Assembly: GCF_039654945.1 (NCBI RefSeq)
Contig: NW_027361731.1
Location: 558,001-622,000, forward strand
Source: Dendrobates tinctorius
Lineage: Eukaryota
Direction: 5' to 3'
DNA length: 64,000 bases
Shown: positions 6,738-43,532 of the stretch, in pieces
Position numbering within the stretch: position 1 is the first letter of the stretch
How the letters are laid out: each line of letters starts with the position of its first letter
Translations under genes and position numbers: made by a program
Notes under the pieces: generated by a model
Database searches by the model: none
Told to the model about the DNA's origin: nothing
Seen by the model: the letters and a program-made list of their open reading frames with translations, nothing else

Positions 6738-9700
6738 ATGGATATGGACAGAGACAAGATGGTGGAGAGGATATTACACCTCACCCTAGAGATCCTCTTC
6801 CATCTTACTGGAGAGGTGAGAGATTCTGATGACGTCACATTACATCATTCTTATGTATGGGAATAACAGATGGACAGAACTGGAGAGGTGAGGACTCTGG
6901 AAATGTCTGTAGTGAGATTTATTAATGTCTCTCTCCATAACCAGGATTACACAGTAGTGAAGAAGACCTCTAGTGAGCGCTGTCAGGACCCTGTGTCTGA
7001 GGGATGGGGAAGACCCCAGAGCGCAATCACGGGGCCTCCACCTCACCCCCTGATACATGAGGACATCAATGACCAAAAGATCCTAGAACTCACCTACAAG
7101 ATGATTGAGCTGCTGACTGGAGAGGTGACACTGCTGGGAATGCTGGGACATTATACTGTAACGCTATGAAGGGATCGGGGGATGACGGTATCATTGTATG
7201 TGTCAGGTTCCTATAAGGTGTCAGGATGTCGCAGTCTATTTCTCCATGGAGGAGTGGGAGTATTTAGAAGGACACAAAGATGTGTACAAGGACATCATGA
7301 TGGAGGTTCCCCAGCCCCTCACATCACCAGGTAATAGACAGGACTAAATACACACGGCCTATAATTATCTGTATGTAAAGAATGAATTCAGTCCCTGTAT
7401 GTGTTTCCTCCAGATCTATCCAGTAAGAGGACAACACCAGAGGGATGTCCCCATCCTCTTCTTCCACAGGACTGTAAGCAAGAAGATCCCAATGTTCCTC
7501 AGGATCACCAGGTAGATGGAGAGAAGGTGTCATGAGATCTCCCCTATGATGTGTAGACGGCTGTGAAGGTCTTGTGCTCAGTCTTGTTTTATCCACCAGT
7601 ATTATATGTTTTATACTTGTGTAATGAGAACGGTGGAGATGGCAGGATTATTGCTGATCATAGATGTGACTTCTCCATCTGTCTGTGACTTTTACAATAT
7701 TTGTTTCAGGGTGAAGATCTGACTCATAATAATACTACAGAGACATATGTGAGGGGTGATGAGCCGTGTAAAGAGGAGATTACTACTTATAAACGGTCAG
7801 GTGAGTTGTAACCACAAAATATAAAGAAGTCAGATATTTTTTTTGGCGGCTTTTTCGATGGTGTAGTCCGATGTTAGCACCATGCCGGGTTCCCGGCTTG
7901 TCAGCTCACTCACTCGTGCTGCAGTTGGTTCCTCTCTTCCTCATGCTCCCAGCAGCACTTCCACCTGGGTCTCTGGCCATGTTCTGAGGGCACACGCGCG
8001 CTCCCGCCCTCTTAAAGGGTCAACGCGTGCACTTGCTATTTCCTCCCCAGCCAATGGTTTTGAGGCATTATGTGTATATTGCTTCCTCTCCACTGGGTAG
8101 GTGCCTGAGCAACCTTCCTGTTTCAGTCTATGTTGTGTAAGGTCGCATACCAGTACAAATCCCGCTTGCTGCACTGTGAAGCTAATCCCGCTTGCTGCAC
8201 TGTGAAGCTAATCCCGCTTGCTGCACTGTGGAGCTAATCCCGCTTGCTGCACTGCGGAGCTAATCCTGCCTGCTGCACTGTGAAGCAAATCCTGCCTGCT
8301 GCACTCTGAAGCAAATCCTGTTTGCTGCACTCTGAAGCAAAACTTGCTTACTGCACTCTGGCACAAACTCTTTCAGCTGCACTCAGATACAAGCTCTGCC
8401 TGCTGCTGTATCCAGTCCGCCCTTCGGGTCCAGCTGCTGCGCGACAGATAGTCTGCCCTGGAGTGGCACCTGGCATTCATCGGGAGCCAAGTCTAATCTC
8501 ACCATGCTCTAGTGAATAGTCAGGTGATCGCTTAGTCATGTCCCTCCAGGCTCTCCGCAGTTTGTGGCACAGTGGTTCCACAAACCACAACTGTGACAGT
8601 TTTCTCAGGCCATGGATCCCGCTGGACCCCGGACCCTGCCCGTACGGACCATGTACCAGGAGCTTTGCCGACAGAAGATTGCACAGGAAGAGCTGTCCAC
8701 ACAGTTGCAGGCCTTAAACATCCCTCCAGGGTTCCAGCATCTCGAAGCAGCCGTGTCTCCTCCAGAGACTTCCCAGACAATTTGCTTAGTTCAAGATCTT
8801 GGCCACTGACTCGCAGCCCCACCATGTTTTGACGGCAATCCGAAGCTCTGCCGTGTGTTCATCAACCAGGATCGGCTACATTTTGAACTTCTTCTGCACC
8901 ACTTCCTGCTGGATCGAGCCAAGGTGGTGTTTCCAATGTTGCACCTTGGAGGTGAGGCTCTGGCATGGTTGAACACATTGTGGAAGAGCGAGGATCTGAT
9001 CATCTCCAATTTGCCTGCATTCTTGGAAGCTTTTTGCAAAGTGTTCGATGAACCCGGGTGAACCGCCTCTGCAGCTTCTGCTTTGCTCCGTTTACAACAG
9101 ACCAATTCTTCTGTGGGGGCAATATGCGGTACGCTTTCGCACTCTGGCGTCCTCGTATGGAACAATGAAGCTTTGCTGGCGACATTCTGGGAGGTTTCCG
9201 GAGATATTAAGGATGAGCTAGCCGGTCGAGACCTACCAACCACCCTCAACGACCTGATCACTCTTGCTATCTGTATAGGCCTCCACTTCCATGAGCGTGC
9301 TAGTGAGGTGGCATGAGAAAGAAAACCGCAGCACCTGGCTCCGGTTCTTTTTTCAAGGACCGGAGAAGCTCCGGCATCTTCGGGCAGTAGGGGAAGTCTC
9401 CCTAAACGGAAAGAACGTCTCTCAACCCCTGATTCTTGCTGTGGCTGTGACAGCCAGTGAATCTCGGTTTGTTGAGTCAGCATATTTGGATTCCGGGGCA
9501 GCCAGAAATTTCATCCTTTCAGGCTGTAGTGAATCGATTCCAAATCCCAGTTCAGCCACTTCAGAACCCCATGGCAATAACATCTGTCGATGGGCGAACT
9601 CTTCTGGAGACGGTTCGTTTGGCTACTGAGCTGCGTGAGATCCGAATTGGGATGCTCCATACAGAGAAAATGGTCGTCTTTGTCATCTCCAACATGTCTC

Positions 9701-12700: not shown

Positions 12701-15700
12701 CGGAGGTTGTCTTCCCCGCCCTGATGGGGGACAGGAACACAAGAGGTTAAATACCCCTCCTCTTCCTGCAACCACCCGTGTTTTCCTGTCCCCTATGGAG
12801 CATGAAGAGGTCTACGATGGTGCTGCCGTTGCCGGCGATCGGAAGCACCCTACGTCTTTCACTTGTACATGCTGGGCAGCCGAGGCCGGGGGCCCTGCTC
12901 TCCAGTGGCTGCTCCCATCTCCTCCTGCTCGGTGGACTCGTGTCCCTCCCGCCTCTCCTGCGCCTCCTCGGGAGGTAAAGCGGGGCGGTGACGTGTGCGT
13001 CGGTGGGCCAAAGGGGGGAGGAGGAGCACAGATGACGCTGGACCCACGATTTTTAAAGATCCGGGTGGGGAGCACCAGGTAAGACAACCTGTATGACGCT
13101 GACTACAGACGGACATGGATGGTGATAAACCCTCTCTCTCTGCTTCTGCGGAGCCCAGCGTACCCCCCTCCTACTGTAAGTAGCAGATGTCGGCCCTGGC
13201 TATCCTACCTTTATTCCCTCCAGTGGCTTAGCTTACCTTCTCTCTCTCTCTTATAGGGAGAAAAGGTCTCTGACCCTAAGAGGACCAGCTGCAAATGTAA
13301 AATGTGTGCTGCTAGACTCCCCTCTTCATCTGGAAAAAGCTCTGCCAATCCTGTACAGAGGAGGTCCTATGTTCTGAACAGCCCTCTCTTCTGGATAGCA
13401 TTAAATCCCTCATAAAACAGGAGCTTCAGGCCTCCATGGCCACTTTATTCCAGATCCCGGTGCCACAACCACCTCTCTCTAAGAAGAGGAAGAAAGCTCC
13501 GATAGAATCTGACCCAGACTCGGGTGACATTCAGTCCTCTGGTTCGGAGGACACTTGGGAGAATGAGGGTTCTACTTCCACTTCCACTCCTAAATCGGTG
13601 AACAAACAATGTTACTTTTAGTTCCAAGGATATGGGTGAACAAATCAGTATGGTTAGGGGCACCATGGGGGTGGAGTTGGAAGAAGTTAAATACACGGTA
13701 CAGGATGAGATGTTTGGGGGTCTGAAGCCCAAAGATCAAAAGGGGTTTCCTGTACACGAGAACGTACAAAATCTGATCCTCCATGAATGTGGCCTCTCTG
13801 AAAATGGCCTCAGCGTGCCCTCTGAGCTGAAAAACTGTTTCTGCCTGGATGGTGATAATTCCTTATCGGAGACCCCAAAGGTAGTCGTGCAGGTGTCCAG
13901 GGTATCTAAGAAAACAGCCCTTCCCTTTGAGGACTCTTCCCAGCTCAAAGATCCTATGGATCAAAAAATTGAGAGTTTATTAAAGAAGTCGTGGGACACC
14001 TCTACAAATCTGCTAAATGCTAATATAGCTTCCACATGTGTGGCCAGGTCCCTGTTTCTATAGCTATATTTTGAACTTCTTCCACGCCACTTCCTGCTGG
14101 ATCGAGCAAAGGTGGCGTTTTTAATGTTGCACTTTGGAGGTGAGGCTCTGGCATGGTTGAACCCATTGTGGAAGAGCGAGTATTCGATCAGCTCCAATTT
14201 GCCTGCATTCTTGGAAGCTTTTCGCAAAGTGTTCGATCAACCTGGGTGAACCACCTCTGCAGCTTCCTTCCTCACCATCGGAGTCTATAGTGAGAAGTCA
14301 GGTGATCGCTTAGTCACACCCCTCCAGGCTCTCCGTGGTTCGTGGCACAGTGGTTCCACAAACCTCGACCGTGACATCTGGCCATATCACAATCATCTCA
14401 TCATTGTTTTGCCGCTAGACCACAACATGTTCCTCCACCCAAAACGGTTCAAATGACGTTGGTCATTGGAAGTCCTTTCCTATAGAAGTTACAACCTGAA
14501 GGAGCCACCTATGACTTGGGATAAGAAGACACTGATAATTACCTACCCAGTTCTGTAAACTGGAAAGTCAAATGACCGCGTATGTAGAATGTGCTGACAA
14601 GTTAGAAAATCACTTGAAGAAAAATATTAAGATGTGTATTGTAATGATGCTGTTGGCTTCCTAGATCCCTGATATCTTATTGGATGAATCTACCTCTGTA
14701 TAATAACAACAGAGTTTCCTCTTATCCTGACTTTTCAATTTAATATTGACTAACTTGAAACGGGGTCGTGAGAAACTACGTAAAACCATTACACCTGTGC
14801 GATGATATATCTCTAAGCTGTGTGTGGCTGATGGCTGTAATATTCATGCCTGCAGGGGATGTGTTGGAATGACTCGAGCCCTGATTTCCTGAATTCACTC
14901 TACGTCATAAATTCCATTATGTTTTCAATCCTAAGGAATTCAGATTACTGCACAATCTCTCCTGAAATGGGGAGACTAATACTTTCTCTACCCTTCTGGT
15001 CAGGACTCACAGTAGGTCCAATGGTCCACCATAAATGAGTGCAAGTCCTGTTTAGTATTGGATCTTGCCCCTCATGCATATGTTGTTGAGGATGTAACAT
15101 GTGTTTTTTTTCTCTGTCTATTTTTTTTTACAGTTTTTCATATTGTATGAGTTGTGCTGGAATTGGCCTGCCTCACTTATGTGAGCCTGTAACTTCATGG
15201 TAGTCTTTAAAAAAAAAAAAAAAAAAAAAAAAGGTTGCCTTTGCCTCTTCCAAAGGCCCAAGATCTTAATTTTAAAACACCACATCCCTGCAATATTATA
15301 AAAAGTCCTCCTTGAATGTCTAATACTTTTTAAAGAAACTCATTTAATGGAAAATATTGCCTGAGCTCTAAATTTATTTGCTGTTCTGTGATGTGACATG
15401 GCAAGAAGAATAGTTAGATAGCCGGGTCACAAACAGGAGAGCAGAGGAAATACAAAAGCAGAAGATGCTAGTGTAGTCAGTAAACGGGCCGGGGTGACAA
15501 CAATCGGGAGCTGAGCACAGGACTGAACCAGAGGAGAACAAGGCTGTGCCTGGCAGCTTCCGACAATATGCTTCTAGTTTTAGTAGGGCGTGGTGCTTTC
15601 CTGTTGGCTGAAGCAGGAAGCCGATTACTTCAGTTGGACACCACACAATCCCATACTGCTAGACTGGATGGTACTACAGGTCCCAGGCAACCTAATCTTT

Positions 15701-18362
15701 TTGGAAGGACAGAACCTGTGCCATCCAGAGTTTCTGGTTGCTATGTCTCCTCCATCACCAGCGCCACCTGCAGAATGAATAAGGTGGCGCCTGATGGCAG
15801 AAACAGACGTTGCAGGAGCAGATACCAGAAAAAATGTGACACACCATTTTCAGAAGTCCTAATATGACAAAATACAAAACCAGAGCAGTAGAAATCCCAA
15901 TAAAGTGTCTCAATTTTGGAAATTATAACCCTCAGGGAATTAATCTATAGGAGTAGTGACTTCTTTGATTTCACGGCCACTTTCTGGAAACTAGAACTGA
16001 GTGGATGTTGGAGAGTGAAAATTGCACATTTGCCATTTTATTACCCAACACAGAGTGTTCAGATTGTGCTTCAGGAGACACACACCTATATTAAGTGGGT
16101 TCTTCTCAATATAGTAATGCCAAATACCTGGATGTTGAATGTGGTTTGGGCGCACTGAAAGGCTCACAAGTGAGGGAAAGATTTGACTTTGGGAGAGCAG
16201 ATATTGCTGGATTGGTTTATGGAAGTCATGTTGCTTTTCAAGAGCCTTTGAGCCACTAATAATGTGGAAACCTCTGTTTTTCCTCTGGCACATGATGTAC
16301 CTGAGTGAGGCTTGTTCTTTGTGAGATGAGTAGAAGTTTTTATTGTTATTTTCACCTACATTTGGGAGGCAGAATGAACAAACAGTCGAACACCACTCTA
16401 CTGGTTCATCCTATGAGGTTTTCTATCAGACTGTGAAATGTCATTGTCTTGGTTTATAATTAAACTTTTTCAACATTGTTTAAGTAAAAATGTTTGAATG
16501 TCTGTCCAGCCTCTGTCCAGCCTCTGTTAAAAAGTATAAATTTCAAGGATGTTATTCAAAAATAATAATTGGATTTTTTCTTGGCAGATGACTGTACCAA
16601 GAGATCAGAGGGACAGCTGACATCTTCAATTTTTAAACCAGATGATCTTGAGAGTACACAGGAGACAATTGAAGTGAATGTCATTACTCCAGATATACCA
16701 TCATTCATTTGCAGCAAAGATCTACCATCTGATCCTTTGAAACAGGTCCTGCCTTCTGATTCATTACCGACCCCTGAGGAAAATCAAAGTCACAAAATAA
16801 GCATTAAAAAACAAACTGATAAAGCAAAGAAGCCATTTTCACGTTCAGAATATGTAAATCGTTTTCCCCTCCAAAAGTCTTTTCTTAAATTTCAAAAAAT
16901 TCACACAGCGGAGAATAGATTTTCTTGTTCCAAGTGTGGGAATTGTTTTAATCATAAATCACATCTTGTTAAGCACCAGAGAACCCACACAGGGGCAAAG
17001 CCATTTTCATGTTCAGAATGTGGGAAATGTTTTAACAAGAAATCAGATTTTGTTAGGCACCAGAGAATTCACACAGGGGAGAAGCCTTTTTCATGTTCAG
17101 AATGTGGAAAATGTTTTACAGTGAAAGCAAATCTGATCAAACATCAGCGAACTCACATGGGAGAGAAGCCATTTTCATGTTCAGAATGTGGAAAATATTT
17201 TAACCAGAAATCAAATCTTATCACACATCAGAGAACTCACACAAGTGAGAAGCCTTTTTCATGTTCAGAATGTGGGAAATGTTTTAATCATAAATCACAT
17301 CTTGTTAAGCACCAGAGAACCCACACAGGGGAAAAGCCATTTTCATGTTCAGAATGTGGGAAATGTTTTAACAAGAAATCAGATTTTGTTAGGCACCAGA
17401 GAATTCACACAGGGGAGAAGCCTTTTTCATGTTCAGAATGTGGAAAATGTTTTACAGTGAAAGCAAATCTGATCAAACATCAGCGAACTCACATGGGAGA
17501 GAAGCCATTTTCATGTTCAGAATGTGGAAAATATTTTAACCAGAAATCAAATCTTATCACACATCAGAGAACTCACACAAGTGAGAAGCCATTTTCATGT
17601 TCAGAATGTGGGAAATGTTTTAACCAGAAATCAAATCTTACTGTACATCAGAGATCTCACACAGGGGAGAAGCCTTTTTCATGTTCAGAGTGTGGGAAAG
17701 GTTTTAACGGGAAATCAAATCTTATCACACATCTGAGAACCCATATAGGGGAGAAGCCTTTTTCCTGTTCAGAATGTGGAAACTGTTTTAACCAGAAATC
17801 AAGTCTTATCACACATCTGAAAACTCACACAGGGGAGAAGCCATTTTCATGTTCAGAATGTGGAAAATGTTTTATCCAGAAATCAAGTCTTATCATACAC
17901 CAGAGAAATCACACAAGTGAGAAGCCATTTTCATGTTCAGAATGTGGAAAATGTTTTAACCAAAAATCAAGTCTAATCACACATCAGAGAATTCACACAG
18001 GGGAGAAGCCATTTTCCTGTTCAGAATGTGGGAAATGTTTTAACCAGAAATCAAGTCTTATCACACACCAGAGAAATCACACAAGTGAGAAGCCATTTTC
18101 ATGTTCAGTATGTGGAAAATGTTTTAACCAGAAATCAAGTCTTATCACACATCAGAGAACTCACACAGAGGAGAAGCCATTTTCCTGTTTAGAATGTGGG
18201 AAATGTTTTAACAGTAAAGCAGGTCTTGATAGCCACCATAGAACCCACACAGGGGAGAAACCTTTTTCATGTTCAGAATGTGGAAAATGTTTTGAGAATA
18301 AATCATCTCTTCTTCGCCATCAGAGCAGTCACACGGGGGAGAAGCTTTTTTCATGTGCTTAA
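6738..18362 (+). CDS. Amphibian FAX/KRAB-like C2H2 zinc-finger protein (XlCOF/XlCGF-like), ~781 aa, 17 intact fingers. Coding exons: 6738-6815, 6945-7124, 7207-7330, 7414-7511, 7710-7800, 16588-18362
   Basis: All introns are GT-AG with compatible phases (0,0,1,0,1), giving 2346 nt without internal stops. N-terminus [33 protein letters not shown]...[16 protein letters not shown] (finger-associated boxes). KRAB-A-like exon [33 protein letters not shown]. Last exon has 17 CxxC-x12-HxxxH fingers with TGEKP linkers. First coding exon acceptor is at 6665/6666. Confidence 0.93.
8158..8360. repeat. 26-bp tandem repeat inside the 5' LTR
   Basis: AATCCCGCTTGCTGCACTGTGAAGCT repeated ~7-8 times, degenerating toward the 3' end. 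Confidence 0.9.
12679..14063 (+). mobile_element. 5' part of a DIRS1-like retrotransposon (terminal region plus broken ORF1/gag, LAP2alpha-like)
   Basis: Local inverted motif GGGGACAGGAA...TTCCTGTCCCC. ORF1 pieces include CKMCAARLP...CQSC and [40 protein letters not shown], typical of vertebrate DIRS1 ORF1. Confidence 0.75.
16020..16350 (-). mobile_element. Old fragment related to the internal repeat of the piggyBac-type element at 24751-29484
   Basis: GTCATGTTGCTTTTCAAGAGCC...GTGGAAACC is a diverged reverse complement of GGTTTCCACTG...GGCTCTCCAAATGCAACATGGC (26319-26365). Confidence 0.55.
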
Positions 18363-22164: not shown

Positions 22165-24365
22165 GTCCATTGAAATTGACCCCCAAGGATGAGAGGGGAC
22201 GGGTAGTAGTTGAAGCAGTCCTATAGGTGTTACACGAGGCATCTTAAAGCGTGCACATACCTCACTAGAGAGAATGTAGATCTTGTCTTTCAGACAGGTA
22301 GGCTACCAAAAAAATAGCTCAGGAACTCCTGTGTCTTCTGTCCCCCCTGATGACCCACCAACTTGGAATCATGGACAAACTTGAGGACCTGCAGCTTTAC
22401 GGCCTCAGGAATGTATAAATGTTGATCCCGGACCCACATACCGTTCTTGAGAACTAAGTTCACGCCAGCAGTCGGATTGGCGAGAAATGGGTCTGCATCA
22501 TAGGTGTCACGATCCCACTGCTGACATCGGTATGTCACGGACGGAGGGATGCAACGCACTGCCGACACACTACTATCACAGGTGCAGGGGGGCTTATCTT
22601 AGTTATCCCACCGCTAGCACCATGTGACAAAAAACAGCAAGCTAATCTTGCCCTAACAATTTATCACAGGGGGGGTTATTTTGGATGCCTCACCACTGCT
22701 AACAATCTTCCATGAACTGCTGGGATTTATGTATATCCCACTTTCTCAGTTCCACTTTGGAACTCGCAGCTTTCCGGTGCCCCCTTACCCTCAGGTCAGT
22801 CAGGGAACTACACCTGGGATAATTGGTTACCGGCCGGCTGCTTCAATGAGGTCTGGCCACCCTGCATGGTGCAGTGAGGGAATTATGAATGCTCTGGCCG
22901 CAGCCACCCAATTAGCTTATCAAATCCCTTTTCGTCACAGCCAGCAGTACCAAGGGGCCCAAATCACATTTCGCTGCCACCAGCTACGATTCACTTAATG
23001 AGTTAATTAAGAAGGTCCGTAGCAAACCCCCAAATTAGTAGCAATTATCTAAAAGGCGCATAAGTTCGTTTCTTAGAGCATGAAGACAGACTAATAAATT
23101 TACCATCTATTCCCAAAAAGATGGGCAGTGATTACACAGGTAAGAATGTTACAAAGTTGAGACATTGGATATGTACAATACAAATATAAAATAAAAGGGA
23201 TTAACAGCAGAAATTAAACTTACAGTTGCTTAGATGGTCTGTAGGCTACCATGTGGAGAGGGGGATGGGCAGCAAGTCACACATCTCCCTGCATCTGGGG
23301 GTTCTTTTTGGCATCAAAACCTCCAGCTAGACTGACTGTTTTTTTCAAGGGAATGCCTTATAACCTCTGCTGTGTGACATCACGAAAGGGGTAGTCTGGA
23401 GATGTTCCTCCCCCTGCTCTAAGTACAGATGTGGGTCTGGAAAACTTAGAACCATCATATCTGGACTTGGGAACCTAGCAGAGTATCGGCAGAACCATCA
23501 TTCATCTTGTATTGAAATTAGCTTTGTAATGACACCTAGCACTAGCTGCTTATTCCACTCTGTATAGGAGAACTCTGTTTCTCTGGTACTGTCAGCGCTA
23601 GAACCATGAAAATTATGGGTCAGAACATCGGTTTCGTGCCCTACGCAGAGATGTGATTTTTACATCTCTGTCGTGTATGGTTTTCACGATATGGCTTCTA
23701 ATATTTCCCATACCGGTATCCAGCCGCATGACAGGGAACAAAAGAACTCCTTTTCCTGGCTGTGCAGAGAGGGGGGAAGTGAAGGGGGAGAGAGAGCTGC
23801 TGGGACAGGAAATGTCTGGTGTCCTATTACCAGCGGGTAGAGGAGAAACACACACATCTGCTAAGGAGGGGGGAAGGGGGATCACATCTGCAGCATGTGA
23901 CAGGCAAAAGTCTGTTCTGTAGTGTACCAAGGGGGTTTCTGGAATGTACCAGCAAAATCATATCTTACTTAACATTACAATAGGCCTCCTTAATGGTCTT
24001 CCATAGGTCCTTATTCTGAATGACTATGACAAAGATGGCATCAGACAAGACGGTCTTAGACGGTGTCCCAGGTACGGAATCCGTGGCGTGGATTCGGGAC
24101 AAAGCATCCGCTTTCCCATTACGTGAACCTGGGCGGTACAAAATGACAAAATTAAATTGGTTCAAAAATAGACTCCATCGAACCTGACGTGGAGAAAAGA
24201 CATCTCGCAGATCTAAGGAATTCCAGGTTGTGATGATCCATGAGCACAATAATTTGTTGTGCTGCCCCGTGCAGATGGTGCCTCCATTCCTTAAATGCAG
24301 CGATAATGGCTAGAATCTCCTTATCTCCCACATCGTAGTTCTTCTCTGCAGCAGAGAGTCTGAGA
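22165..24365 (-). mobile_element. Gypsy pol fragment (RNase H to integrase zinc finger), inverted relative to the rest of its element
   Basis: [29 protein letters not shown]...[15 protein letters not shown]...TIKEAY|DADPFLANP...LYIPEAVKLQVLKFVHDSKLVGHQG, split by a solo LTR. Confidence 0.88.
22505..23979. mobile_element. Solo LTR (1475 bp)
   Basis: TGTCAC...TTACA termini; exact 5-bp TSD ATAGG (22500-22504 / 23980-23984); the pol frame rejoins across it. Confidence 0.88.
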
Positions 24366-26207
24366 GTTTCGGACAAAATCATCTCCGAAAGGGGAGTGCA
24401 CTTTACGCCCAGGTTCTGGAAGGGATTCTGCTCTGCGCTTTGTTATTAATGTTTGTCTGTCTTCTGCATATCATCCTCAGACTAATGGACAGATGGAGCG
24501 GACTAATCAGTGGCGTAGCAACTGTTTGTGGCGCCCGGGGCGGTCGAAAAATTTGCCGCCCCTTTGGTCGTTGATAATCCGGAAGCATCCGAAGAGCCCA
24601 CACTACACTCAAAGATCTAATTTTTAGTCTGCTACTAACTCTGCTGTTATTATTTCTACATTTCTAGACTTTCATCTTCTTGCAGTTCTCTTTATATATA
24701 TGTATGTATTAGCTTGATGATGCTGGATGAAGACCTAATGGCTTTTTTAACCCCTTCCTGACATCAGACATACTATCCCGTGCATGGGACCCGGGCCCCT
24801 ATGCCCATGGACGGGATAGTACGTCTACCGCGATCAGCGGCGCCCACATGGTGAGCGCCGCTGATCGCGGCCGGGTGTCAGCTAATTATCACAGCTGACA
24901 CCCGGCACAATGTGTCAGGGGCGGTCACGGACCGCCCCCGACACGTTAACCCCTTGCACACCACGATCAAACATGATCGCGGTGTATCGGGGGTTAAAGG
25001 GAAGCATCGGCAGGGAGGGGGCTCCCTCCGTGCTTCCCTGAGCCCCCCACGGCAGCGCAATGTGCAGCGCTGCTGCCGGGGGCTCCTTTCCTACAGGCCC
25101 CCGAATCCAAGATGGCGACGGGGGCCTTCGGGGGCCTGCAGGAAGCTGGCTTCCTCAGTGCCTGCAAAGCGCAGGCATGAGGAAGCCTTCTGCACTGCCT
25201 GTGACAGATCGCTGATCTGTCACAGTGATCTGTGATGTGACAGATCAGCGATCTGTCACAGGACAGTGATGTCCCACCTGGGACTATTTAATAAAGTAAA
25301 AAAAAAATAAAAAAAAGTGTTAAAATAATTTAAAAAAAATCGCCAAATAAATTACAAAAAAAAAAAAATATTCCCCCAAATAAATCCATTTTTTGAAAAT
25401 AAAAAAAAAACAATAAAAGTACACATATTAGGTTTCGCCGCGTCTGTAACGACCCGCCCTATAAAAATGTCCCAATAGTTAACCCCTTTAGCGAACCCCT
25501 TAAAAAATAAAAATAAAAAACGAAGCAAAAAAGAATGATTTATTATCATACCGCCAAACAAAAAGTGTAATAACGCGCAATCAAAAAGACGCATATAAAT
25601 ATCCATGGTACCGCTGAAAACGTCATCTTGTCCCGCAAAAAACGAGCCACCACACAGCATCATCAGCGAAAAAATAAAAAAGTTATAGCTCGCAGAATAA
25701 AGCGATGCAAAAATAATTATTTTTTATATAAAATAGTTTTCATTGCATAAAACCGACAAAACATAAAAAAAGACCTAAATGAGGTATCGCTGTAACCGTA
25801 CTGACCCGAAGAATAAAACCGCTTTATCAATTTTACCGCACGCGGAACGGTGTAAACGCACCCCCCCAAAAGAAATTCATGAAACGCTGGTTTTTGCTCA
25901 TTCTGCGTCCCAAAAATCGGAATAAAAAGCGATCAAAAAATGTCACGTGCCCGAAAATGGTACCAATAAAAACGTCAACTCGTCCCGCAAAAAATAAGAC
26001 CTCACATGACTCAGTGGGTCAAAATACGGAAAAATTATAGCTCTCAATATGTGGTGATGCAAAAACTATTTTTACAATAAAAAGCGTGCGACAGCTGCCA
26101 AAAATAAAAACCGCCATAAATAGTAAATCAAACCCCCCCGGTATCACCCCCTTAGTTAGGGAAAAATAATAAAATAAAAAAAATGTATTTATTTCCATTT
26201 TTCCACT

Positions 26208-26310
26208 ACGGTTAGGGTTAGGGTTAGGGTTAGGGCTAGGGTTAGGGCTAGGGTTAGGGCTAGGGCTGAGATTAGGGTTAGGGGTGTGTTGGGGTTCGGG
26301 TTGGAGTTAG
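26208..26310 (+). repeat. Interstitial telomere-like (TTAGGG/CTAGGG)n tract
   Basis: GGTTAGGGTTAGGGTTAGGGTTAGGGCTAGGG... read directly. Confidence 0.9.
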
Positions 26311-26314
26311 AATT

Positions 26315-28860
26315 GGGGGTTTCCACTGTTTGGGCACATCAGGGGCTCTCCAAATGCAACATGGCGTCTGATTTCAATTCCAGCCAATTCTGAGTTGAAA
26401 AAGTCAAATGGTGCTCCTTCCCTTCCAAGCTCTGACATGCGCCCAAACAGTGTTTTACCCCCACATGTAGGGTATCAGCCTACTCAGGACAAATTGCAAA
26501 ACAATTTTTGGGGTCCAATTTCTCCTGTTACCCATAGGAAAATAAAAAATTGGGGGCAAAAATATCATTTTTGTGGAAAAAAATTATTTTTTTATTTTCA
26601 CGTCCAAGCGTTATAAACTTCTGTGAAGCACTTGGGGGTTCAAAGTGCTCACCACACATCTAGATAAGTTCCGTGGGGGGTCTAGTGTCCAAAATGGGGT
26701 CACTTGTGGGGAGTTTCAATAGTTTAGGTACATCAGGGGCTCTCCAAACGCACATGACACCCGCAGACCATTCCATCAAAGTCTGCATTCCAAAATGTCA
26801 CTGCTTCCCTTCCGAGCCCCGACGTGTGTCCATACAGTAGTTTTCTCCCACATATGGGGTGTCAGCGTACTCAGGCCAAATTGGACAACAACCTTTGGGG
26901 TTCAATTTCTCCTGTTATCCTTGGGAAAATAAAAAAATTGGGGACTAATTGATCATGTTTGTGGAAAAAATACGATTTTTTTATTTTCATGCCCGAGCAT
27001 TATAAACTTCTGTGAAGCCCTTGGGGGTTCAAAGTGCTCACCACACATCTAGATAAGTTCCTTAGGGGGACTAGTTTTCAAAATGGGGTCATTTGTGGGG
27101 GGTTTCCACTGTTTAGGTACATTAGGGGCTCTCCAAAGGCAACATGACACCCGCAGACCATTCCATCAAAGTCTGCATTCCAAAACATCACTACTTCCCT
27201 TCCGAGCCCCGACGTGTGCCCATACAGTAGTTTTCTCCCACATATGGGGTATCAGTTTACTCAGGACAAATTGGACAACAACTTTTGGGGTCCAATTTCT
27301 CCTGGTACCCTTGGGAAAATAAAAAAATGGTGACTAAAATATCATGTTTGTGGAAAAAATATGATTTTTTTTATTTTCACGCCCGGGCGTTATAAACTTC
27401 TGTGAAGCACTGGGGGGTTCAAAGTGCTCACCACACATCTAGATAAGTTCCTTGGGGGTCTAGTTTACAAAATGGTGTCATTTGTGGGGGGTTTCCACTG
27501 TTTAGGTACATCAGGGGTTTTCCAATCGCAACATGGTGTCCGATTTCAATTCCAGCCAAAAACGTCAAATGGCGCTGCTTCCCTTCCGAGCTCTGCCATG
27601 CGCCCAAATAGTGGTTTACCCCCACATGTGGGGTATCAGCGTACTCAGGACAAATTGCACAATAACTTTTAGGGTCCTGTTACCCTTGGAAAAATAAGAA
27701 TTGAGGGTGAAAAGATCATTTTTGTGGAAAAAATATGATTTTTTAATTGTACGGCTTTATGTTATAAACTTCTGTGAAGCCCTTGGGGGTTCAAAGTTCT
27801 CACCACACATCTAGATAAGTTCCTTAGGGGGTCTAGTTTCCAAAATGGTGTCATTTGTGGGGGGTTTCCACTGTTTTGGTACATCAGGGGTTTTCCAATC
27901 GCAACATGATGTCCGATCTCAATTCCAGCCAAAAACGTCAAATGGCGCTGCTTCCCTTCCGAGCTCTGCCATGCGCCCAAATAGTGGTTTACCCCCACAT
28001 GTGGGGTATCAGCGTACTCAGGACAAATTGCACAATAACTTTTAGGGTCCTGTTACCCTTGGAAAAATAAGAATTGAGGGTGAAAAGATCATTTTTGTGG
28101 AAAAAATATGATTTTTTAATTGTACGGCTTTATGTTATAAACTTCTGTGAAGCCCTTGGGGGTTCAAAGTTCTCACCACACATCTAGATAAGTTCCTTAG
28201 GGGGTCTAGTTTCCAAAATGGTGTCATTTGTGGGGGGTTTCCACTGTTTTGGTACATCAGGGGTTTTCCAATCGCGACATGATGTCCGATCTCAATTCCA
28301 GCCAAAAACGTCAAATGGCGCTGCTTCCCTTCCGAGCTCTGCCATGCACCCAAATAGTGGTTTACCCCCACATGTGGGGTATCAGCGTACTCAGGACAAA
28401 TTGCACAATAACTTTTAGGTTCCTGTTACCCTTGGGAAAATAAAAATTGGGGTGAAAAGGTCATTTTTGTGGAAAAAATATGATTTTTTAATTGTACCGC
28501 TGTACGTTATGAACTTCTGTAAAGCCCTTGTGGGTTCAAAGTTCTCACCACATATCTACATAAGTTCCTTGGGGGGGTCTAGTTTCCAAAATGGGGTCAC
28601 TTGTAGGGGGTTTCCACTGTTTAGGTACATCAGGGACTCTCCAAACGTGACATGGCGTCCGATCTGAATTCCAGACAATTTTGCATTGAAAAAGTCAAAC
28701 GGCGCTCCTTCCATTCTGAGCTCTGCCATGCGCCGAAACAGTCGTTCCCCCCCCCACATATCAGGTATCAGCGTACTCAGGACAAATTGCACAATAACTT
28801 TTGCAGTCCAATTTCTCCTGTTACCCTTGGTAAAATAAAAAAAATTGAACCTGAAGTATT
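26315..28860. repeat. ~373-390-bp tandem repeat (~6-7 units) inside the piggyBac-type element
   Basis: Identical ORFs recur at offset 373 (27762/28135; 27845/28218); recurring motif CTCACCACACATCTAGATAAGTTCC. Confidence 0.92.
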
Positions 28861-29981
28861 TTTTTTGTGAAAAAAAGTTAGATGTTCATTTTTTTTTAAA
28901 TATTCAAAAAAATTCCTGTGACGCACCTAAAGGGTTAATAAACTTCTTGAATGTGGTTTTGAGCACCTTAAGGGGTGCAGTTTTTAGAATGGTGTCACTT
29001 TTGGGTATTTTCTATCATATAGACCCCTCAAAGTGGCTTCAAATGTGATGTAGTCCGTAAAAATAAAATGGTGTTGTAAAAATGAGAAATCGCTGGTCAA
29101 CTTTTAACCCTTATAACTTCCTAACAAAAAAAAATTTAGTTTCCAATATTGTGCTGATGTAAAGTAAACATGTGGGAAATGCTAGTTATCAAGTTTTTTG
29201 GGTGCCATATCTCTGTGATTTAAGGGCATAAAAATTCAAAGTTGGAAAATTGCAAAATTTTCCAAATTTTCGCCAAATTTCCGTTTTTCTCACAAATAAA
29301 CGCAAGTTATTTGAATTAAATTTTACCACTAACATGAAGTACAATATGTCACGAGAAAACAATGTCAGAATAACCGGGATCCATGGAAGCGTTCCAGGGT
29401 TATGACCTCATAAAGGTACAGTGGTCAGAATTGTAAAAATTGGCCCGGTCATGAAAGTGCAAACCACCCTTGGGGGTGAAGGGGTTAATAATAATTTTTA
29501 ATAATGTGACAGAAAAAAAAAGAAAGTACAAATTATTTTCGAAACTTGGGTAAAGTTCAGCGGTGTTCGCCGGGCCGGAAGTGCGCTGCCACCCCCACGG
29601 TGGAGACACACAGGCAGGTCCTGCTGGCTGCTGCACTGTGCCTCCGTGCTTCTCCCACAGAGAGGAATTGCTGCTGCTGCTGCGCCGCCCCCACACACGT
29701 GCCGCCTGGGGCGGACCGCCCCCCCACGCTACGCCACTGGGCACTGCTGAGGTGTTATGGAAGCCCAGGTTGCTTTGATAGCAGCCTTCAGCTCGTCTTA
29801 AGAGATCTGGTTGCTCATAATATTAGCCAACGTGTTGCGCAGAGATAGACAGGGAGCGCTCTACTGGTTCAAAATGAAAATGGAAGTGAAGCTCCCTGAA
29901 CTGACATAGAAATCAGGACACTTTGAGGATAAGAAAGTTTAATTTCTTTGTGCTTTGCAACACTTTGGGCAATCCCTTTAA

Positions 29982-30387
29982 GGCTGGGGTCACACTAGCG
30001 TATGGCATCCGATGCGAGAGCACTGCTGCGAGTGTGAGTTGAGTGTCCTGCTACTGCACTCCCATTCTCTCACAAAGAGCTGATCAGAGCACAGCTGCGG
30101 AGGAGGCGGAGAAAGTAGTTTCTCCATCTTCTCCGTTGCCGGCGTCACCGTATATCGCACCGCACTCAGATGATATCCGAGTGATGTGCGTTGTGTCACT
30201 CGCACCCATAGATGCAAGTGAGCCGAGACTCGGCCAAGTCTCATTGCCAATCGCAGCATGCTGCGACCGATTCAGCTTGAGAAAATTGCAGATATGATCT
30301 GCCCCAAAGAATAACACTGGAACGAGTGCTATGCAATGTTTTCTCGCATAGCACTCGTCCGTATTCCACGGTAGTGTGACGCCGGCC
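29982..30387. mobile_element. Harbinger/PIF-type MITE in the captured STK25 intron
   Basis: TIRs GGCTGGGGTCACACTA / TAGTGTGACGCCGGCC; TAA TSD on both sides. Confidence 0.8.
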
Positions 30388-30451
30388 TAAGTCTCCCATC
30401 GAGACTCAGTTTCCTAGTACAGAGCGCATTAATAAAGGTTTAGGATGTTAC

Positions 30452-31298
30452 CTTCAGGTAGGAGCCATAATAGCGAGTGATATAAGGACTGTCACACTGG
30501 CTCAGAACAGTGATCTCTTGTTGAATGTCCTCAATCTCATCTTCTGCCTCTTCCAGGTCTATGATCTTGATGGCCACCACTTCTTTGCTGCGATTCTCTA
30601 TACCTTTGTACACTTCTCCAAATGATCCCCTCCCAATGCGCTCCAGCTTGGTGAAGAGGTGTTCTGGGTCCATTCTCGATCCCTACAGAGGAAGAAATAA
30701 TCAGAAAGCCACAATACCTAGTGCCTTTACCATTTACTTTCTAGATGAGCCGTCACATTACGGCAGCTGCTTCCCTCCCCCCTGTCCCATTTCCTTTACT
30801 GAATTCCGTATACAAAGCCCGGGGCAAGTGGCGGCGTAATGCAGGCTGCACCGGGCAGTTATACCGGTCACAGTCCTCCTCGTGTAGCAATAACCAGTGG
30901 TGGATTCCGTGTACAGACAGCAGTCACTTTGATATTAAATCACAATCAGTTTTGTTTTTCTGAAATCAGCCACAAACTGTCTTCACTTTCCAATCTGCAT
31001 GGTAAAAATAATGACATTCTTTCAGCTGATCCCTGAGGTTCATTCTGTACTGCTGTATGTGGATGTGCGCAACTCTGGAGCTGGTTAGTGCAGGTGCAGC
31101 TCATGAGAAGCGAGACGAGACCCTGACTAGTGCACAGCAGACACGATGCAACGAAAACAGACCCGTGAAGAAGCCACGTTACCCATAAGACCTGCAGGCT
31201 GGCTGAGTTAGCGCGGCCTCTTGGTGGGCGACCCAATAGCGGTGTACTGCAATAAGAGTGAGGATTACCTGTGATGGGAAGTCCCGTAGGTGCGCCAT
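30452..31298 (-). pseudogene. STK25: Truncated copy of serine/threonine kinase 25 (GCKIII): coding exons 31298-31269 and 30682-30452
   Basis: MAHLRDFPSQ|gt...ag|[77 protein letters not shown]|gt. The MAHLR start, EVYKG, KEVVAIK and PYITRY favour STK25 over STK24/STK26. The 30-nt and 231-nt exons are in phase 0 with no stops; no downstream kinase exons are seen. Confidence 0.9.
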
Positions 31299-31669
31299 TC
31301 TGGAGCAATCTGATTCCGCTCAGTGACCCATAGACTGGGGGTGGCGGCACAGCGCACACAACTTGCCCCACTTCGCTCGCCCCTCTATAATCTGCACAGC
31401 CCTGAATGCAACACACTGACAAGAAGCAGCAGCTGTGAGACTGTTCTGCTACCAATAGTCATAGGCAGTGGCTGCAATGTGCAGAGATAACATGTCCCTA
31501 CTGCTGGGATGTATGGAGCCCAGCACACTACATCCGCAGCTCCCTCCTATACTAAGCTATGGCAGCCCATAGCACTGAGCCATAGCCACTCAGCACAGCA
31601 ATCCACAGGGTTCTAACAGCTGGCCTGCTCTATACAGAGAACAAAACAGTCCTCCCTGATGCCACACAC

Positions 31670-31990
31670 GTACTTACGTCATCCCCGCCCAGGATCCTGG
31701 GACATGTAGTTCTTTTGGAAGCCGTTGTCTATTGTCCTGATGGCACCCAGAACTACAAATCCCACAAGCTAAAGGCGCGGGGTGTTCTGGGAGTTGTAGA
31801 AGCTAGGCATGAACGTAAACAGGAGACATTTAAGTCATGTGACTGGAGTTAGGCGTTACGTCACGCCTATGGAAACCGCTCCGGGATAGTGGGAGGGAAT
31901 AAGGGGAACTGGTATCACGTGACTACAAGTAACCCATGCACTGCTGATATACTGTGGTGGTGGCCGTGTGCGCCCGCGTGTGCTCCGCCC
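31670..31990 (-). promoter_or_regulatory. Probable STK25 non-coding first exon and housekeeping-type promoter
   Basis: Minus-strand donor GAC|GTAAGT at 31677; GC box; three ZNF143/THAP11-type ACTACAnnTCCCA motifs (CTGGGACATGTAGT ~31697, ACTACAAATCCCA 31752, CTGGGAGTTGTAG ~31788); E-box TCACGTGA at ~31915; CpG-rich. Confidence 0.7.
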
Positions 31991-33222
31991 GTGGTTGTCA
32001 CAGACCATAGAAAATAAAATGTATTCCCTGCTCTGCGCTTCTCCCACAGAGGAGAGGAATTGCTGCTGCTGTCGCGCCGCCCCCACACACGTGCCGCCTG
32101 GGACGGACCGCCCCCCCACGCTACGCCACTGGGACTAATCAGACTCTGGAACAGTATCTTCGATGCTATATCAGCCATTCGCAGGATGACTGGTTGGAGT
32201 TGCTTCCACTAGCAGAATTTTGTTACAACTCTCAGAGTTCATCTACTAAGGTAACACTCTTCTTTGCCAACCTGGGTTATCATCCCAATATTCTTCCCAG
32301 ATCCCCTATCGATGCACCGGTGCCTGCAGTACATGAGAGGTTGACAGCACTGAGACACAATCTGGAAACCCTGAAGGAATCGCTGTCTACTGAACAGGAT
32401 AGATATAAGAGATCTGCCGATAGGTGCAGGCCTCCCAGATCTATGTTCGAGGTAGGAGACTCTGTGTGGTTATCTACTAAAAACTTGAGATTGAACATTC
32501 CATCACAGAAACTGGGACAATAATTCAAGATCAAGATCTCTGGGATCTTGAGTTCTGTTGCCTGTTGTCTGAAGTTGCCGAGGACCTTGAAGGTACATCC
32601 TGTGTTTCATGTCTCCCTGTTAAAACCAGTGTCTCCAAATACTTTTCGGAGTTGTATTACACCTCCTCAGCCTGTGATAGTGTAAGGACAAGTACAGTTT
32701 GTTGTAGAGAAGATTCTGGATTCTAGAATCCGCAGGAATCAACTGCATTACCTAATCAAATGGCAAGGATATCCATCTGAGGAGAACTCTTGGGAGCTGG
32801 TGGGCAATATCTGTGCTCCTCAAAAAATTACTCTGTTCCATGAGAAATATCCTGACAAGCCTGGTCCTGGATCGTCCTGAGGCCGCTTCTGAGGTGGGAG
32901 TAATGTAAGAATTCTGCACTTTCTTTGTGACTGTTCGCCTTGATCCAAGATGGAGTCTGGGATCTCACCCTGTCATGGAATCTCCTGTCTGTCCTGATTA
33001 TTTAAGTCCGGGTCATGTGTTCTCCTGTGCCTGAGTATTTTGTTGCTGTCTTGCTCCTGCCCAGGCTGGGATCAGAACCAGAGCGCTGAGTGGATTTGCC
33101 CTAAATTCCATACCAATGATCCCTTTAAGAGACCCTGGGGTCAGAACCACAGAGCTGAGTGAAACTGTCTTAACTTCCATACTAGCGATCCCTTTAAGAG
33201 AGGCCTGTGGTCAAAACCAAAG

Positions 33223-42437: not shown

Positions 42438-43532
42438 GGCTGGTTTCACATTTGCGTTTTTTTTTCGCGGTAATTTAGCACTAAATAGCGCATGCGTTTT
42501 TTTTTCCTATACTTTGCATGGGATGCGCTTATGTGCGCATACACATGCGTTTGTACGCGTTTTACCGCGCATGCGTTTTTTTGCGGTATGCGCTCGGGCG
42601 CACAAAATGCAACCTGTTGCATTTTTTGTGCGTCCGATTTGCCTCAAAAAACGCATGCGCGCGCAATGCGTTTTTTTTACAGCAAGACACCCAATATAAG
42701 TCTATGGGTGCGCATATGTGCGCATTGGCATGCTTATGTATGCGTTTTTTTGCACATGCGTTTTTTTTTGTTAACCATGGAATTTAGGGGTTTGGGTTAG
42801 AGTTAGGGTTAGTTAAGGGGGTTTAGGGTTAGGGTTAGGGTCAGGGTCAGGGTTGGGGTTAGGGTCAGGGTCAGGGTTAGTTAGGGTTTAGGGTTTGGGT
42901 TAGGGTTAGGGTTAANNNNNNNNNNNNNNNNNNNNNNNNNNNNNNNNNNNNNNNNNNNNNNNNNNNNNNNNNNNNNNNNNNNNNNNNNNNNNNNNNNNNN
43001 NNNNNNNNNNNNNNNNNNNNNNNNNNNNNNNNNNNNNNNNNNNNNNNNNNNNNNNNNNNNNNNNNNNNNNNNNNNNNNNNNNNNNNNNNNNNNNNNNNNN
43101 NNNNNNNNNNNNNNNNNNNNNNNNNNNNNNNNNNNNNNNNNNNNNNNNNNNNNNNNNNNNAAGGTTTAGGGTCAGGGTTAGGGTTAGGGTTAAGGTTAGT
43201 TAGGGTTTGGGTTAGGGTTAAGTATGGTTTGGTTAAGGGTTAGGGTCAGGGTTAGGGTTAGGGTCAGGGTTAGGGTTAGGGTCAGGGTTAGGGTTAGTAA
43301 AGTCATGGTTTGGGTTAGTGTGAGGGGCCACCTAATGTTGGAAAAAACCGCAAACGCGGTAAAAACGCACTAAAAACGCATACAAACGCATAAAAACGCT
43401 GCGTTTTTTTCATGCATGCTCATAAAAATGCTTGAAAAAAACGCAGCAGTTGTATGCTTTTGTATGCGTTTTTTCAATGCGTTTTTTTGCGGGAAAAACG
43501 CGCTGCAAAAAAAAGCAAGTGTGAAACTAGCC
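42438..43532. mobile_element. Harbinger-type MITE with a central telomere-like array spanning the assembly gap
   Basis: TIRs GGCTGGTTTCACATTTGC / GCAAGTGTGAAACTAGCC; TGA TSD; degenerate (TTAGGG)n at ~42783-43318. Confidence 0.82.
42916..43160. other. Assembly gap (245 N)
   Basis: Run of N between TTAGGG-like repeats. Confidence 1.

What the first reader, a model, noticed from the sequence alone, without database searches (positions are those of the whole stretch)
30440..31990. Captured STK25 fragment looks expression-competent: intact promoter motifs, splice sites and an open kinase N-lobe
Seen: three ZNF143/THAP11-like motifs, an E-box, intact GT/AG sites and 87 uninterrupted codons covering the Gly-rich loop, VAIK lysine and alphaC region. 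Read-through of the exon 3 donor adds VTS-stop (30440). Inference: this could yield a ~90-aa catalytically dead N-lobe peptide (GCKIII N-lobes bind MO25, so a decoy role is conceivable), chimeric transcripts spliced into downstream TE sequence, or RNA antisense to the neighbouring + strand ZNF gene. ZNF143-type promoters are often bidirectional, so it may also fire toward the Gypsy/CR1 side. Intactness may only reflect recent capture.
Basis: partly seen in the sequence, partly recalled or inferred. Interest (0 to 1): 0.7.

Follow-up and report, generated by a model that had tools for sequence, protein, structure and literature searches.

The report
Transposon-carried copy of stk25 gene start
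This stretch is a jumping-element-borne duplicate of the promoter and first two coding exons of a poison frog's stk25 kinase gene; its signals are intact, but intactness fits its young age and nothing shows that this copy is used.

Summary
On the minus strand lie a promoter with ACTACA-TCCCA motifs, GT/AG splice sites, and 87 open codons identical to frog STK25 except one residue (R18H), then VTS-stop at 30440.

It is a captured fragment. 2.2 kb of the stk25 5' end (31958-29740) sits inside a 7.6-kb composite hAT-type element (24508-32131) with 12-nt inverted ends and an 8-bp target duplication. I found the real gene of Dendrobates tinctorius; it has no such element ends. Two sister copies lie elsewhere, one with its own target duplication, so the composite moved as a unit.

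"Expression-competent" is only partly supported.
- The spliced RNA contigs that fit this stretch carry parent-only letters, so they are real stk25 mRNA.
- Copy-specific RNA was seen only for sister copy L001, in one run.
- None was seen for the window's copy.
- Among copies, coding changes are 6 replacement to 2 silent, at the noncoding rate, so the peptide is not under selection.
- CpGs in the copied promoters decay about sixfold faster than other sites, which suggests germline methylation.

The scan had already noted this family at other places in this genome. It is a new vertebrate example of a known kind, of moderate interest.

The parts
24500..24507 (.). Left copy of the 8-bp target-site duplication, GGACTAAT.
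   Evidence: It is identical to 32132-32139. The left flank ends in frame inside a degenerate Ty3/Gypsy integrase motif and the right flank continues it.
24508..24750 (.). L-end half of a roughly 500-bp hAT-type MITE. The 12-nt terminal inverted repeat CAGTGGCGTAGC is at 24508-24519.
   Evidence: It is 99.5% identical to L001 14922-15105 and 94% to L002 11835-12084.
24751..29484 (.). Later nested insertion at a TTAA site inside the MITE body. It holds a 373-bp satellite and a TTAGGG-like run, and is not part of the capture.
   Evidence: TTAA lies on both sides with ends CCCCTTC.../...GAAGGGG, and L001 and L002 show the empty site.
29485..29739 (-). R-end half of the same MITE. Its terminal inverted repeat is at 29739-29728 and abuts the captured intron.
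   Evidence: All three copies share the same junction, ctcagcagtgcc|CAGTGGCG.
29740..30451 (-). First 712 nt of the stk25 intron that follows the N-lobe exon. It includes the read-through codons VTS-stop (30451-30440) and an older 400-bp MITE (about 30385-29985).
   Evidence: One search shows homology to parent L008 up to 11581. In the parent the next exon lies at about 12332. ATTAAA is at 29943.
30452..30682 (-). Second exon: 77 codons of the kinase N-lobe.
   Evidence: It has one private change against the parent, at 30660, giving R18H.
30683..31268 (-). 586-nt intron with GT..AG ends.
   Evidence: The joint 30681>31268 is seen in RNA contigs, but those contigs come from the parent gene.
31269..31661 (-). 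First exon: 5'UTR of about 363 nt with six short upstream ORFs, the ATG at 31298 in an A-3/G+4 context, and 10 codons.
   Evidence: The 5' ends of the parent-mRNA contigs map at 31619-31661.
31662..31958 (-). Copied stk25 promoter. It holds three ACTACA-TCCCA motifs (31710-31698, 31752-31764 and a degenerate one at 31800-31788), the E-box at 31921-31916, and two TGACGTAA-like sites.
   Evidence: CpG observed/expected is 0.69 here against 0.85 in the parent.
31959..32027 (-). About 69 nt of filler of unknown origin. All three copies share it and the parent locus lacks it.
32028..32131 (-). Outer fragment of about 104 nt of the MITE R-end. The terminal inverted repeat at 32131-32120 is the composite's right terminus.
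   Evidence: It is 96% identical to the inner R-end.
32132..32139 (.). Right copy of the target-site duplication, GGACTAAT.

Best explanation
The stretch is passive cargo of a composite, non-autonomous hAT-type transposon.

Origin (inferred). A roughly 500-bp MITE inserted in the intron after the second exon of the frog's stk25 gene. A fractured R-end of the same family lay about 370 bp upstream of the transcription start. The transposase then used the outer R tip and the far L tip. This moved everything between them: 297 bp of promoter, exon 1, the 586-nt intron, exon 2 and half of the next intron.

Spread (shown). The composite landed in at least three places. The window's copy split a Gypsy integrase and later received a 4.7-kb nested insertion.

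Activity (shown only for a sister copy). Because a complete housekeeping-type promoter, an ATG, and a donor and acceptor were copied, a copy can be transcribed and spliced. With no downstream exon, it runs on into the intron remnant and ends the reading frame after VTS. This is seen for sister copy L001.

Selection (shown). Neither the peptide nor the promoter is maintained. The copies drift neutrally, lose CpGs as methylated DNA does, and remain intact because each is only about 1.2-1.6% diverged from their common ancestor.

This copy. It is therefore an intact-looking, probably silent or weakly expressed gene relic with no demonstrated function.
For: Transposon frame
- CAGTGGCGTAGC occurs only at 24508(+), 29739(-) and 32131(-), against 0.16 expected by chance.
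- An identical 8-bp GGACTAAT flanks 24508 and 32131.
- The flanks read on as one integrase motif.

Moved as a unit
- L001 carries the same R-fragment, cargo and MITE between its own perfect duplication TCTCAGGC.
- L002 carries the same cargo with the same inner junction.

Parent gene
- The real gene product XP_073437290.1 has an identical 87-aa start except R18H.
- Its locus L008 aligns to 31958-29740 at 3.7% substitutions.
- L008 has no MITE ends and shows the empty site GCAGTGCC|ACAGG.
- No further kinase exons occur in the window or around L001 and L002.

Neutral drift
- Copy-lineage changes are 8/261 coding (6 replacement, 2 silent) against 93/1893 noncoding, p=0.21.
- L001 alone has five replacements, including K>N at donor position -1.
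- Private CpG loss is 6/30 in the promoters against 1.5% per non-CpG site.

RNA
- Spliced contigs carry parent-only letters: T at 31458, G in the 11-nt insert, and a gap sum of 27.
- X5 contigs carry five L001-private letters (29814, 29909, 29932, 30067, 30452). They run from exon 2 into the intron remnant, with zero depth over the spliced intron.
- The two sister copies fetched here (L001, L002) carry 90-aa RefSeq models; no identical product of this window's copy appeared in the word search.
Against: - The donor haplotype with MITEs flanking stk25 was not found. The present parent locus is clean, so macrotransposition is inferred rather than seen.
- The 69-nt filler and the different left end of L002 are unexplained.
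- Logan contigs drop rare variants and can be mosaics. X5 record 20 mixes parent and L001 letters. Absence of this copy's letters therefore does not show that it is silent.
- The CpG argument rests on small counts (1 of 9 privately lost in this copy's promoter) and speaks to the germline only.
- This copy's terminal inverted repeats and coding sequence are the best preserved of the three, which leaves room for activity.
Confidence: 0.85

Rival explanations
1. The window's copy is itself an active small gene. Its promoter fires and the transcript is spliced. A 90-aa, catalytically dead N-lobe peptide is made and acts on GCKIII partners, for example as an MO25 (CAB39) decoy.
For: - All signals are intact in this copy, with a strong ATG context.
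- There is only one amino-acid change from the real kinase.
- The read-through stop lies in the last exon, so nonsense-mediated decay would not be expected (inference).
- A sister copy is transcribed in just this form.
Against: - The replacement-to-silent ratio of 6:2 and the coding rate equal to the noncoding rate show no selection.
- L001 has lost conserved residues and its donor.
- No contig carries this copy's letters.
- By established kinase structure, the peptide stops after beta4. It lacks beta5 and the C-terminal WxF-type motif that anchors GCKIII kinases to MO25, so stable folding and binding are doubtful.
- A single-sequence AlphaFold2 model gave no confident fold (pLDDT 45), which is uninformative either way.
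- Six upstream ATGs lie in the 5'UTR.
Confidence: 0.05
2. The cargo was not moved from a donor locus flanked by two elements. Instead it was copied into a MITE by template switching during gap repair (Pack-type transduplication). The 69-nt filler is a second captured piece.
For: - The present stk25 locus has no MITE ends or excision footprints in 33 kb.
- A filler of foreign origin lies between the R-end fragment and the cargo.
- In the parent, both ends of the cargo carry TCAGCAGTGC, a possible microhomology.
Against: - The cargo abuts the very first base of a complete terminal inverted repeat. The 8 bp before that base (GCAGTGCC) occur once at exactly that point in the parent. This is what an ordinary MITE insertion with its target duplication looks like.
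- A switch back onto base 1 of an element would be a coincidence.
Confidence: 0.25
3. It is the true 5' end of the stk25 gene, with the remaining exons beyond a very large, transposon-filled intron.
For: The promoter, the exons and the splice sites are all intact.
Against: - The real gene lies elsewhere. It spans 13.3 kb and its next exon is 1.46 kb after exon 2.
- This stretch is enclosed by a target-site duplication.
- No further kinase exon lies in the 30 kb downstream.
Confidence: 0.01

Closest known systems
Maize Ac/fAc macrotransposons and composite insertions (Huang and Dooner 2008 as cited in PMC4270019; Zhang et al. 2014, PMC4270019; Sharma et al. 2022, PMC9910405)
   Same: - Both involve the hAT superfamily.
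- The termini of two separate elements, one of them fractured, enclose host DNA.
- A single 8-bp duplication encloses the whole unit.
- The unit can reinsert elsewhere and increase in copy number, carrying gene and regulatory sequence with it.
   Different: - Here the ends belong to a 500-bp MITE in a vertebrate, and no transposase source was identified.
- The donor arrangement is not preserved.
- The events are millions of years old rather than observed in pedigrees.
HelibatN3 carrying the NUBPL promoter, 5'UTR, first exon and part of intron 1, and HelibatN211 carrying the SRPK1 promoter and exon (bat Helitrons; PMC4224331)
   Same: - A vertebrate transposon spreads the promoter, the first exon or exons and a partial intron of a housekeeping gene.
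- Most copies are neutral, and some are transcribed or feed splice sites into other transcripts.
   Different: - Helitrons capture by rolling-circle read-through and reach about a thousand copies.
- Here the mover is a cut-and-paste hAT composite, and only three copies were fetched here (scan notes may point to one more).
Pack-MULEs and other Pack-type elements of plants (PMC5861414); Turmoil-1 of C. elegans (PMC2572040)
   Same: A host gene fragment lies between transposon ends, is often transcribed, and is mostly without coding constraint.
   Different: - Pack elements usually hold internal gene pieces acquired by an unknown copying step, often from several genes.
- Here one contiguous genomic block with its own promoter abuts a complete element end.

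Membership tests
hAT-superfamily non-autonomous element (MITE) | 8-bp target-site duplication | tested here: met
   GGACTAAT flanks the window copy. An independent TCTCAGGC flanks L001.
hAT-superfamily non-autonomous element (MITE) | Short terminal inverted repeats shared by both ends | tested here: met
   A perfect 12-nt CAGTGGCGTAGC lies at 24508(+), 29739(-) and 32131(-), and the same ends occur in L001 and L002.
hAT-superfamily non-autonomous element (MITE) | An autonomous partner with the same ends that encodes a hAT transposase (DDE and hAT dimerisation domain) | not tested
   None lies in the window. A look-up by sequence in the scan's notes was blank, which means nothing.
Macrotransposon / composite transposon | Host DNA between termini of two separate elements, with one duplication enclosing all | tested here: met
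   An internal complete R tip lies at 29739 and an outer R-end fragment at 32131. The duplication pairs 24508 with 32131, not with 29739.
Macrotransposon / composite transposon | The same composite at more than one site with different duplications | tested here: met
   The window copy and L001 meet this. L002 has the cargo but a rearranged left end and no duplication.
Macrotransposon / composite transposon | A donor locus in which the two elements flank the host segment | tested here: not met
   The present stk25 locus (33 kb) has no such ends. A lost haplotype cannot be excluded, because the empty site fits an insertion at GCAGTGCC.
STK25 / GCKIII protein kinase gene | STK25-type N-terminus and N-lobe (Gly-rich loop, VAIK, alphaC) | tested here: met
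   86 of 87 residues are identical to D. tinctorius STK25. See also Pfam and the solved-structure search.
STK25 / GCKIII protein kinase gene | Complete catalytic domain (HRD, DFG and APE motifs) and C-terminal regulatory region | tested here: not met
   These are absent from the window and from 10 kb around each sister copy. It is a gene fragment, not a kinase gene.
ZNF143 (SBS/ACTACA)-type promoter | ACTACA box followed by TCCCA, close to the transcription start | tested here: met
   There are two exact motifs and one privately degenerate motif within 110 nt. They lie 40-140 nt upstream of where parent-mRNA contigs begin.
ZNF143 (SBS/ACTACA)-type promoter | Factor binding and promoter activity of this copy | not testable with these tools
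   Contigs cannot show starts or levels, and no contig carries this copy's letters.

The most novel reading that the evidence does not exclude
The composite acts as a mobile promoter-plus-splice-donor cassette in poison frogs. Wherever it lands it could set up a new housekeeping-type transcription start. Its exon-2 donor could splice into downstream host exons, or its transcripts could feed small-RNA or antisense control of the real stk25. Copies such as this one, with perfect ends and an almost unchanged coding start, might still be mobile and active.
Probability: 0.1. Interest if true: 0.6.

Novelty: new member of a known kind. Interest (0 to 1): 0.4.

Why it matters
Cut-and-paste transposons that duplicate host gene starts are well documented in plants. 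In vertebrates the documented cases are essentially Helitrons in bats.

This is a clear hAT-type case in a vertebrate, with several well-resolved features:
- the real gene is identified;
- the cargo boundaries are known to the base;
- two independent insertion sites are known;
- one copy has copy-specific RNA.

It shows that the very large, transposon-rich genomes of poison frogs also spread working promoters and exons. This matters for genome annotation: RefSeq already lists two such copies as 90-aa 'STK25-like' proteins. It also matters for anyone mapping RNA-seq to stk25.

It does not reveal a new function or mechanism.

Tried and rejected
- **Relaxed-constraint 'stem' (wrong).** I compared the exon with two Logan contigs, L003 and L004 (HSRVDPEELF...GKG...). 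I concluded that six shared amino-acid changes showed relaxed constraint before the copies spread. The real STK25 of D. tinctorius, Phyllobates, Ranitomeya, Engystomops and Rhinoderma has exactly those residues. L003 and L004 are therefore another paralogue or lineage.
- **Spliced contigs as copy expression (wrong).** I first read the spliced contigs in four runs as expression of the captured family, and the 1.8-kb contigs of organism C as possible chimeras. Parent-only letters and gap sums show they are the real stk25 mRNA.
- **Exact look-up of the 77-aa ORF:** not on record.
- **Pfam on the short integrase flanks:** no hit. Continuity of the flanks rests on reading the motif.
- **Search for the 69-nt filler** in the window, L001, L002 and the parent locus: only its own copies were found.
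- **Big representative search:** no long or chimeric protein carries the fragment. It served mainly to reach a full-length query.
- **Single-sequence AlphaFold2 of the 90-aa sister product:** pLDDT 45, uninformative.
- **DNA fold of the MITE:** z = -1.3, nothing notable.
- **Steps not taken.** The joined two-exon model was not sent to any search.
- **Rules.** The N gap at 42916-43160 was left alone.

Full report
**What is there**

Read on the minus strand, 31958-30440 holds, in order:
- a promoter-like stretch;
- a first exon ending in ATG plus 10 codons (ATG 31298-31296, exon end 31269, donor GTAATC);
- a 586-nt intron;
- a 231-nt exon (30682-30452, acceptor TCTGTAG, donor GTAACA);
- the read-through codons VTS-stop (stop at 30442-30440).

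The 77-codon exon is the start of a protein kinase domain (Pfam Pkinase positions 1-67, E=6e-15). It matches solved STK25 best (residues 13-88, E=1e-40). ACTACANNTCCCA occurs exactly twice within 66 nt of the promoter, and three times in the whole window against 0.04 expected. A third copy of the motif is degenerate only in this copy. One correction applies: there are two exons, not three, because contigs of the real mRNA lie unbroken from about 31661 to 31269.

**It is transposon cargo**

The 12-mer CAGTGGCGTAGC occurs in the window only at 24508 (+), 29739 (-) and 32131 (-). The 8 bp outside 24508 and outside 32131 are both GGACTAAT. The DNA on either side reads on as one degenerate Ty3/Gypsy integrase motif: the left flank ends ...SSAYHPQTNGQMERTN and the right flank goes on QTLEQYLRCY.... 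I describe these flanks only and built no joined sequence.

In gene orientation the unit 24508-32131 consists of:
- a roughly 104-nt fragment of the R-end of a MITE (32131-32028);
- about 69 nt of filler (32027-31959);
- 2.2 kb of stk25 (31958-29740);
- a complete MITE of about 500 bp (R half 29739-29485, L half 24750-24508).

The body of that MITE was later split at a TTAA by a 4.7-kb insertion (24751-29484). An earlier first-stage note of this scan (s1-366784) had proposed these end coordinates. I verified them independently.

**Sister copies show it moved as a unit**

The word search with the exon returned two 90-aa RefSeq proteins of Dendrobates tinctorius named 'serine/threonine-protein kinase 25-like' (XP_073442731.1 and XP_073405514.1). 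Both end in VTS. I fetched their loci as L001 and L002.
- **L001** has the same R-fragment, filler, cargo and MITE, with substitution divergence of about 3%. It is flanked by its own perfect 8-bp duplication, TCTCAGGC.
- **L002** has the same filler, cargo and inner junction. Its left end is a full, independently diverged MITE in inverted orientation that lacks about 29 nt of its tip, and it has no duplication. This is unexplained. L002 is the place noted earlier as s1-364536.

No further kinase exon lies in the window or within 10 kb of either sister copy.

**The parent gene**

The length limit of the word search hid full-length relatives. I therefore took these steps:
- I ran the representative search to obtain a long STK25-type query.
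- I searched with it.
- I listed the anuran cluster.

D. tinctorius STK25 (XP_073437290.1, 413 aa) begins with exactly the copies' ancestral 87 residues. The window's copy differs by R18H, L002 by T78N, and L001 by five replacements.

Its locus (L008) aligns to window 31958-29740 with 3.7% substitutions. The next exon lies 1.46 kb after exon 2, so the cargo stops half-way through that intron.

The parent locus has no MITE ends in 33 kb. At the cargo's downstream boundary it reads GCAGTGCC|ACAGG, which is the empty site expected if the MITE had inserted there with GCAGTGCC as its target. The filler has no match in the parent locus.

I infer a lost donor haplotype in which the intronic MITE and an upstream fractured end were used together, as with Ac/fAc macrotransposons in maize (PMC4270019, PMC9910405). 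Capture by template switching remains possible; I put it at about 0.25.

**Age and selection**

With the parent as outgroup, the site patterns are:

| Pattern | Sites |
|---|---|
| All copies differ from the parent | 44 (none in coding sequence) |
| Private to the window copy | 25 |
| Private to L001 | 27 |
| Private to L002 | 35 |
| Shared by two copies | 14 |

This is a star-like burst after a short stem. Each copy is about 1.2-1.6% diverged from the common ancestor.

On the copy lineages, coding sequence changed at 8 of 261 sites (6 replacement, 2 silent). Noncoding sequence changed at 93 of 1893 sites (Fisher p=0.21). Exon divergence thus equals intron divergence, with a neutral replacement-to-silent ratio. 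At this divergence, an open 87-codon frame is what chance gives.

The copied promoters have lost CpGs. Observed/expected is 0.61-0.70 against 0.85 in the parent. Private loss is 6 of 30 ancestral CpGs against 1.5% per other site, about 6.5-fold per nucleotide, which is at least as fast as in the rest of the copies. This suggests the promoters were not protected from germline methylation. The counts are small.

**RNA**

Twenty runs hold at least part of the stretch. I laid four contig sets on 28850-33200: two of the source species and two of a second species.

All four show the joint 30681>31268. However, these contigs carry letters found only in the parent:
- T at 31458;
- the G inside the 11-nt insert after 31319;
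- a gap sum of 27 that equals the parent's.

They are therefore the real stk25 mRNA. The 1.8-kb contigs of the second species simply continue into exon 3, which starts with G.

Copy-specific RNA exists only for L001, in run X5:
- The contigs carry five L001-private letters (29814, 29909, 29932, 30067 and 30452, the last being K>N at donor position -1).
- They run from exon 2 through the intron remnant to 29757.
- Depth over the spliced intron is zero.

No listed contig carries the window copy's private letters, and no identical product of this copy appeared in the word search. Contigs cannot prove absence.

**Verdict**

The stretch is a structurally intact, transposon-dispersed relic of the stk25 gene start. 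It is expression-competent on paper, and a sister copy is demonstrably transcribed. There is no evidence that this copy is used, and there is clear evidence that the family drifts neutrally.

It is a new vertebrate, hAT-type member of a known kind. The nearest known cases are maize macrotransposons, bat Helitron promoter and exon captures (PMC4224331) and Pack-type elements. The scan had already noted the same family elsewhere in this genome (s1-364536, s1-364491).

Noticed in passing
window 24751-29484: A 4.7-kb insertion lies at a TTAA site inside the MITE body, with ends CCCCTTC.../...GAAGGGG. It holds a TTAGGG-like run (26200-26290) and a 373-bp satellite (26315-28843). L001 and L002 show the empty site, so it is a piggyBac-style nested insertion that happened after the composite landed.
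   Followed up: partly
L002 8808-9276 and junction at 9274: In sister copy L002 the left end is a full MITE in inverted orientation that lacks about 29 nt of its R tip. It is joined to the same filler nucleotide where the window copy and L001 have a forward 104-nt R-end fragment. There is no target duplication (AGTAAGTG / ACTTTATG). The order of events is unknown.
   Followed up: partly
window 31959-32027: About 69 nt lie between the R-end fragment and the stk25-derived DNA. All three copies share this stretch, but it is absent from the parent locus and from the rest of the window. Its origin is unknown.
   Followed up: partly
window about 29985-30385: A roughly 400-bp MITE (ends GGCCGGCGTCACACTA / TAGTGTGACCCCAGCC) lies inside the captured intron. 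It is present in all copies and in the parent. Contig depth over it is very high in the RNA-type runs, so it belongs to an abundant family. The last 58 nt of the cargo (29740-29798) also belong to a very abundant repeat.
   Followed up: no
window 24152-24507 and 32140-32700: The composite split a degenerate Ty3/Gypsy integrase on the + strand. An RT_RNaseH piece on the minus strand (24152-24382, Pfam E=5e-13) abuts that integrase in inverted orientation at about 24360-24375.
   Followed up: partly
window 15673-15685: Another exact ACTACANNTCCCA lies on the + strand about 900 bp upstream of the zinc-finger ORF at 16569-18362. It may mark that gene's promoter.
   Followed up: no
L001 and L002 (GCA_039654945.1): RefSeq lists the two sister copies as protein-coding 'STK25-like' genes of 90 aa. 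They are transposon-borne gene fragments. Multi-mapping reads from the real stk25 mRNA may have helped to create these models.
   Followed up: partly
L003, L004 (Logan contigs SRR13336341, SRR13090005): These are GCKIII (STK25-type) kinase loci whose N-lobe exon (HSRVDPEELF..GKG..IDNRTK) differs at six residues from the anuran STK25 cluster. The two loci show no replacement change between each other at saturated silent sites. They are another paralogue or a non-anuran lineage, and they misled me for a while.
   Followed up: partly
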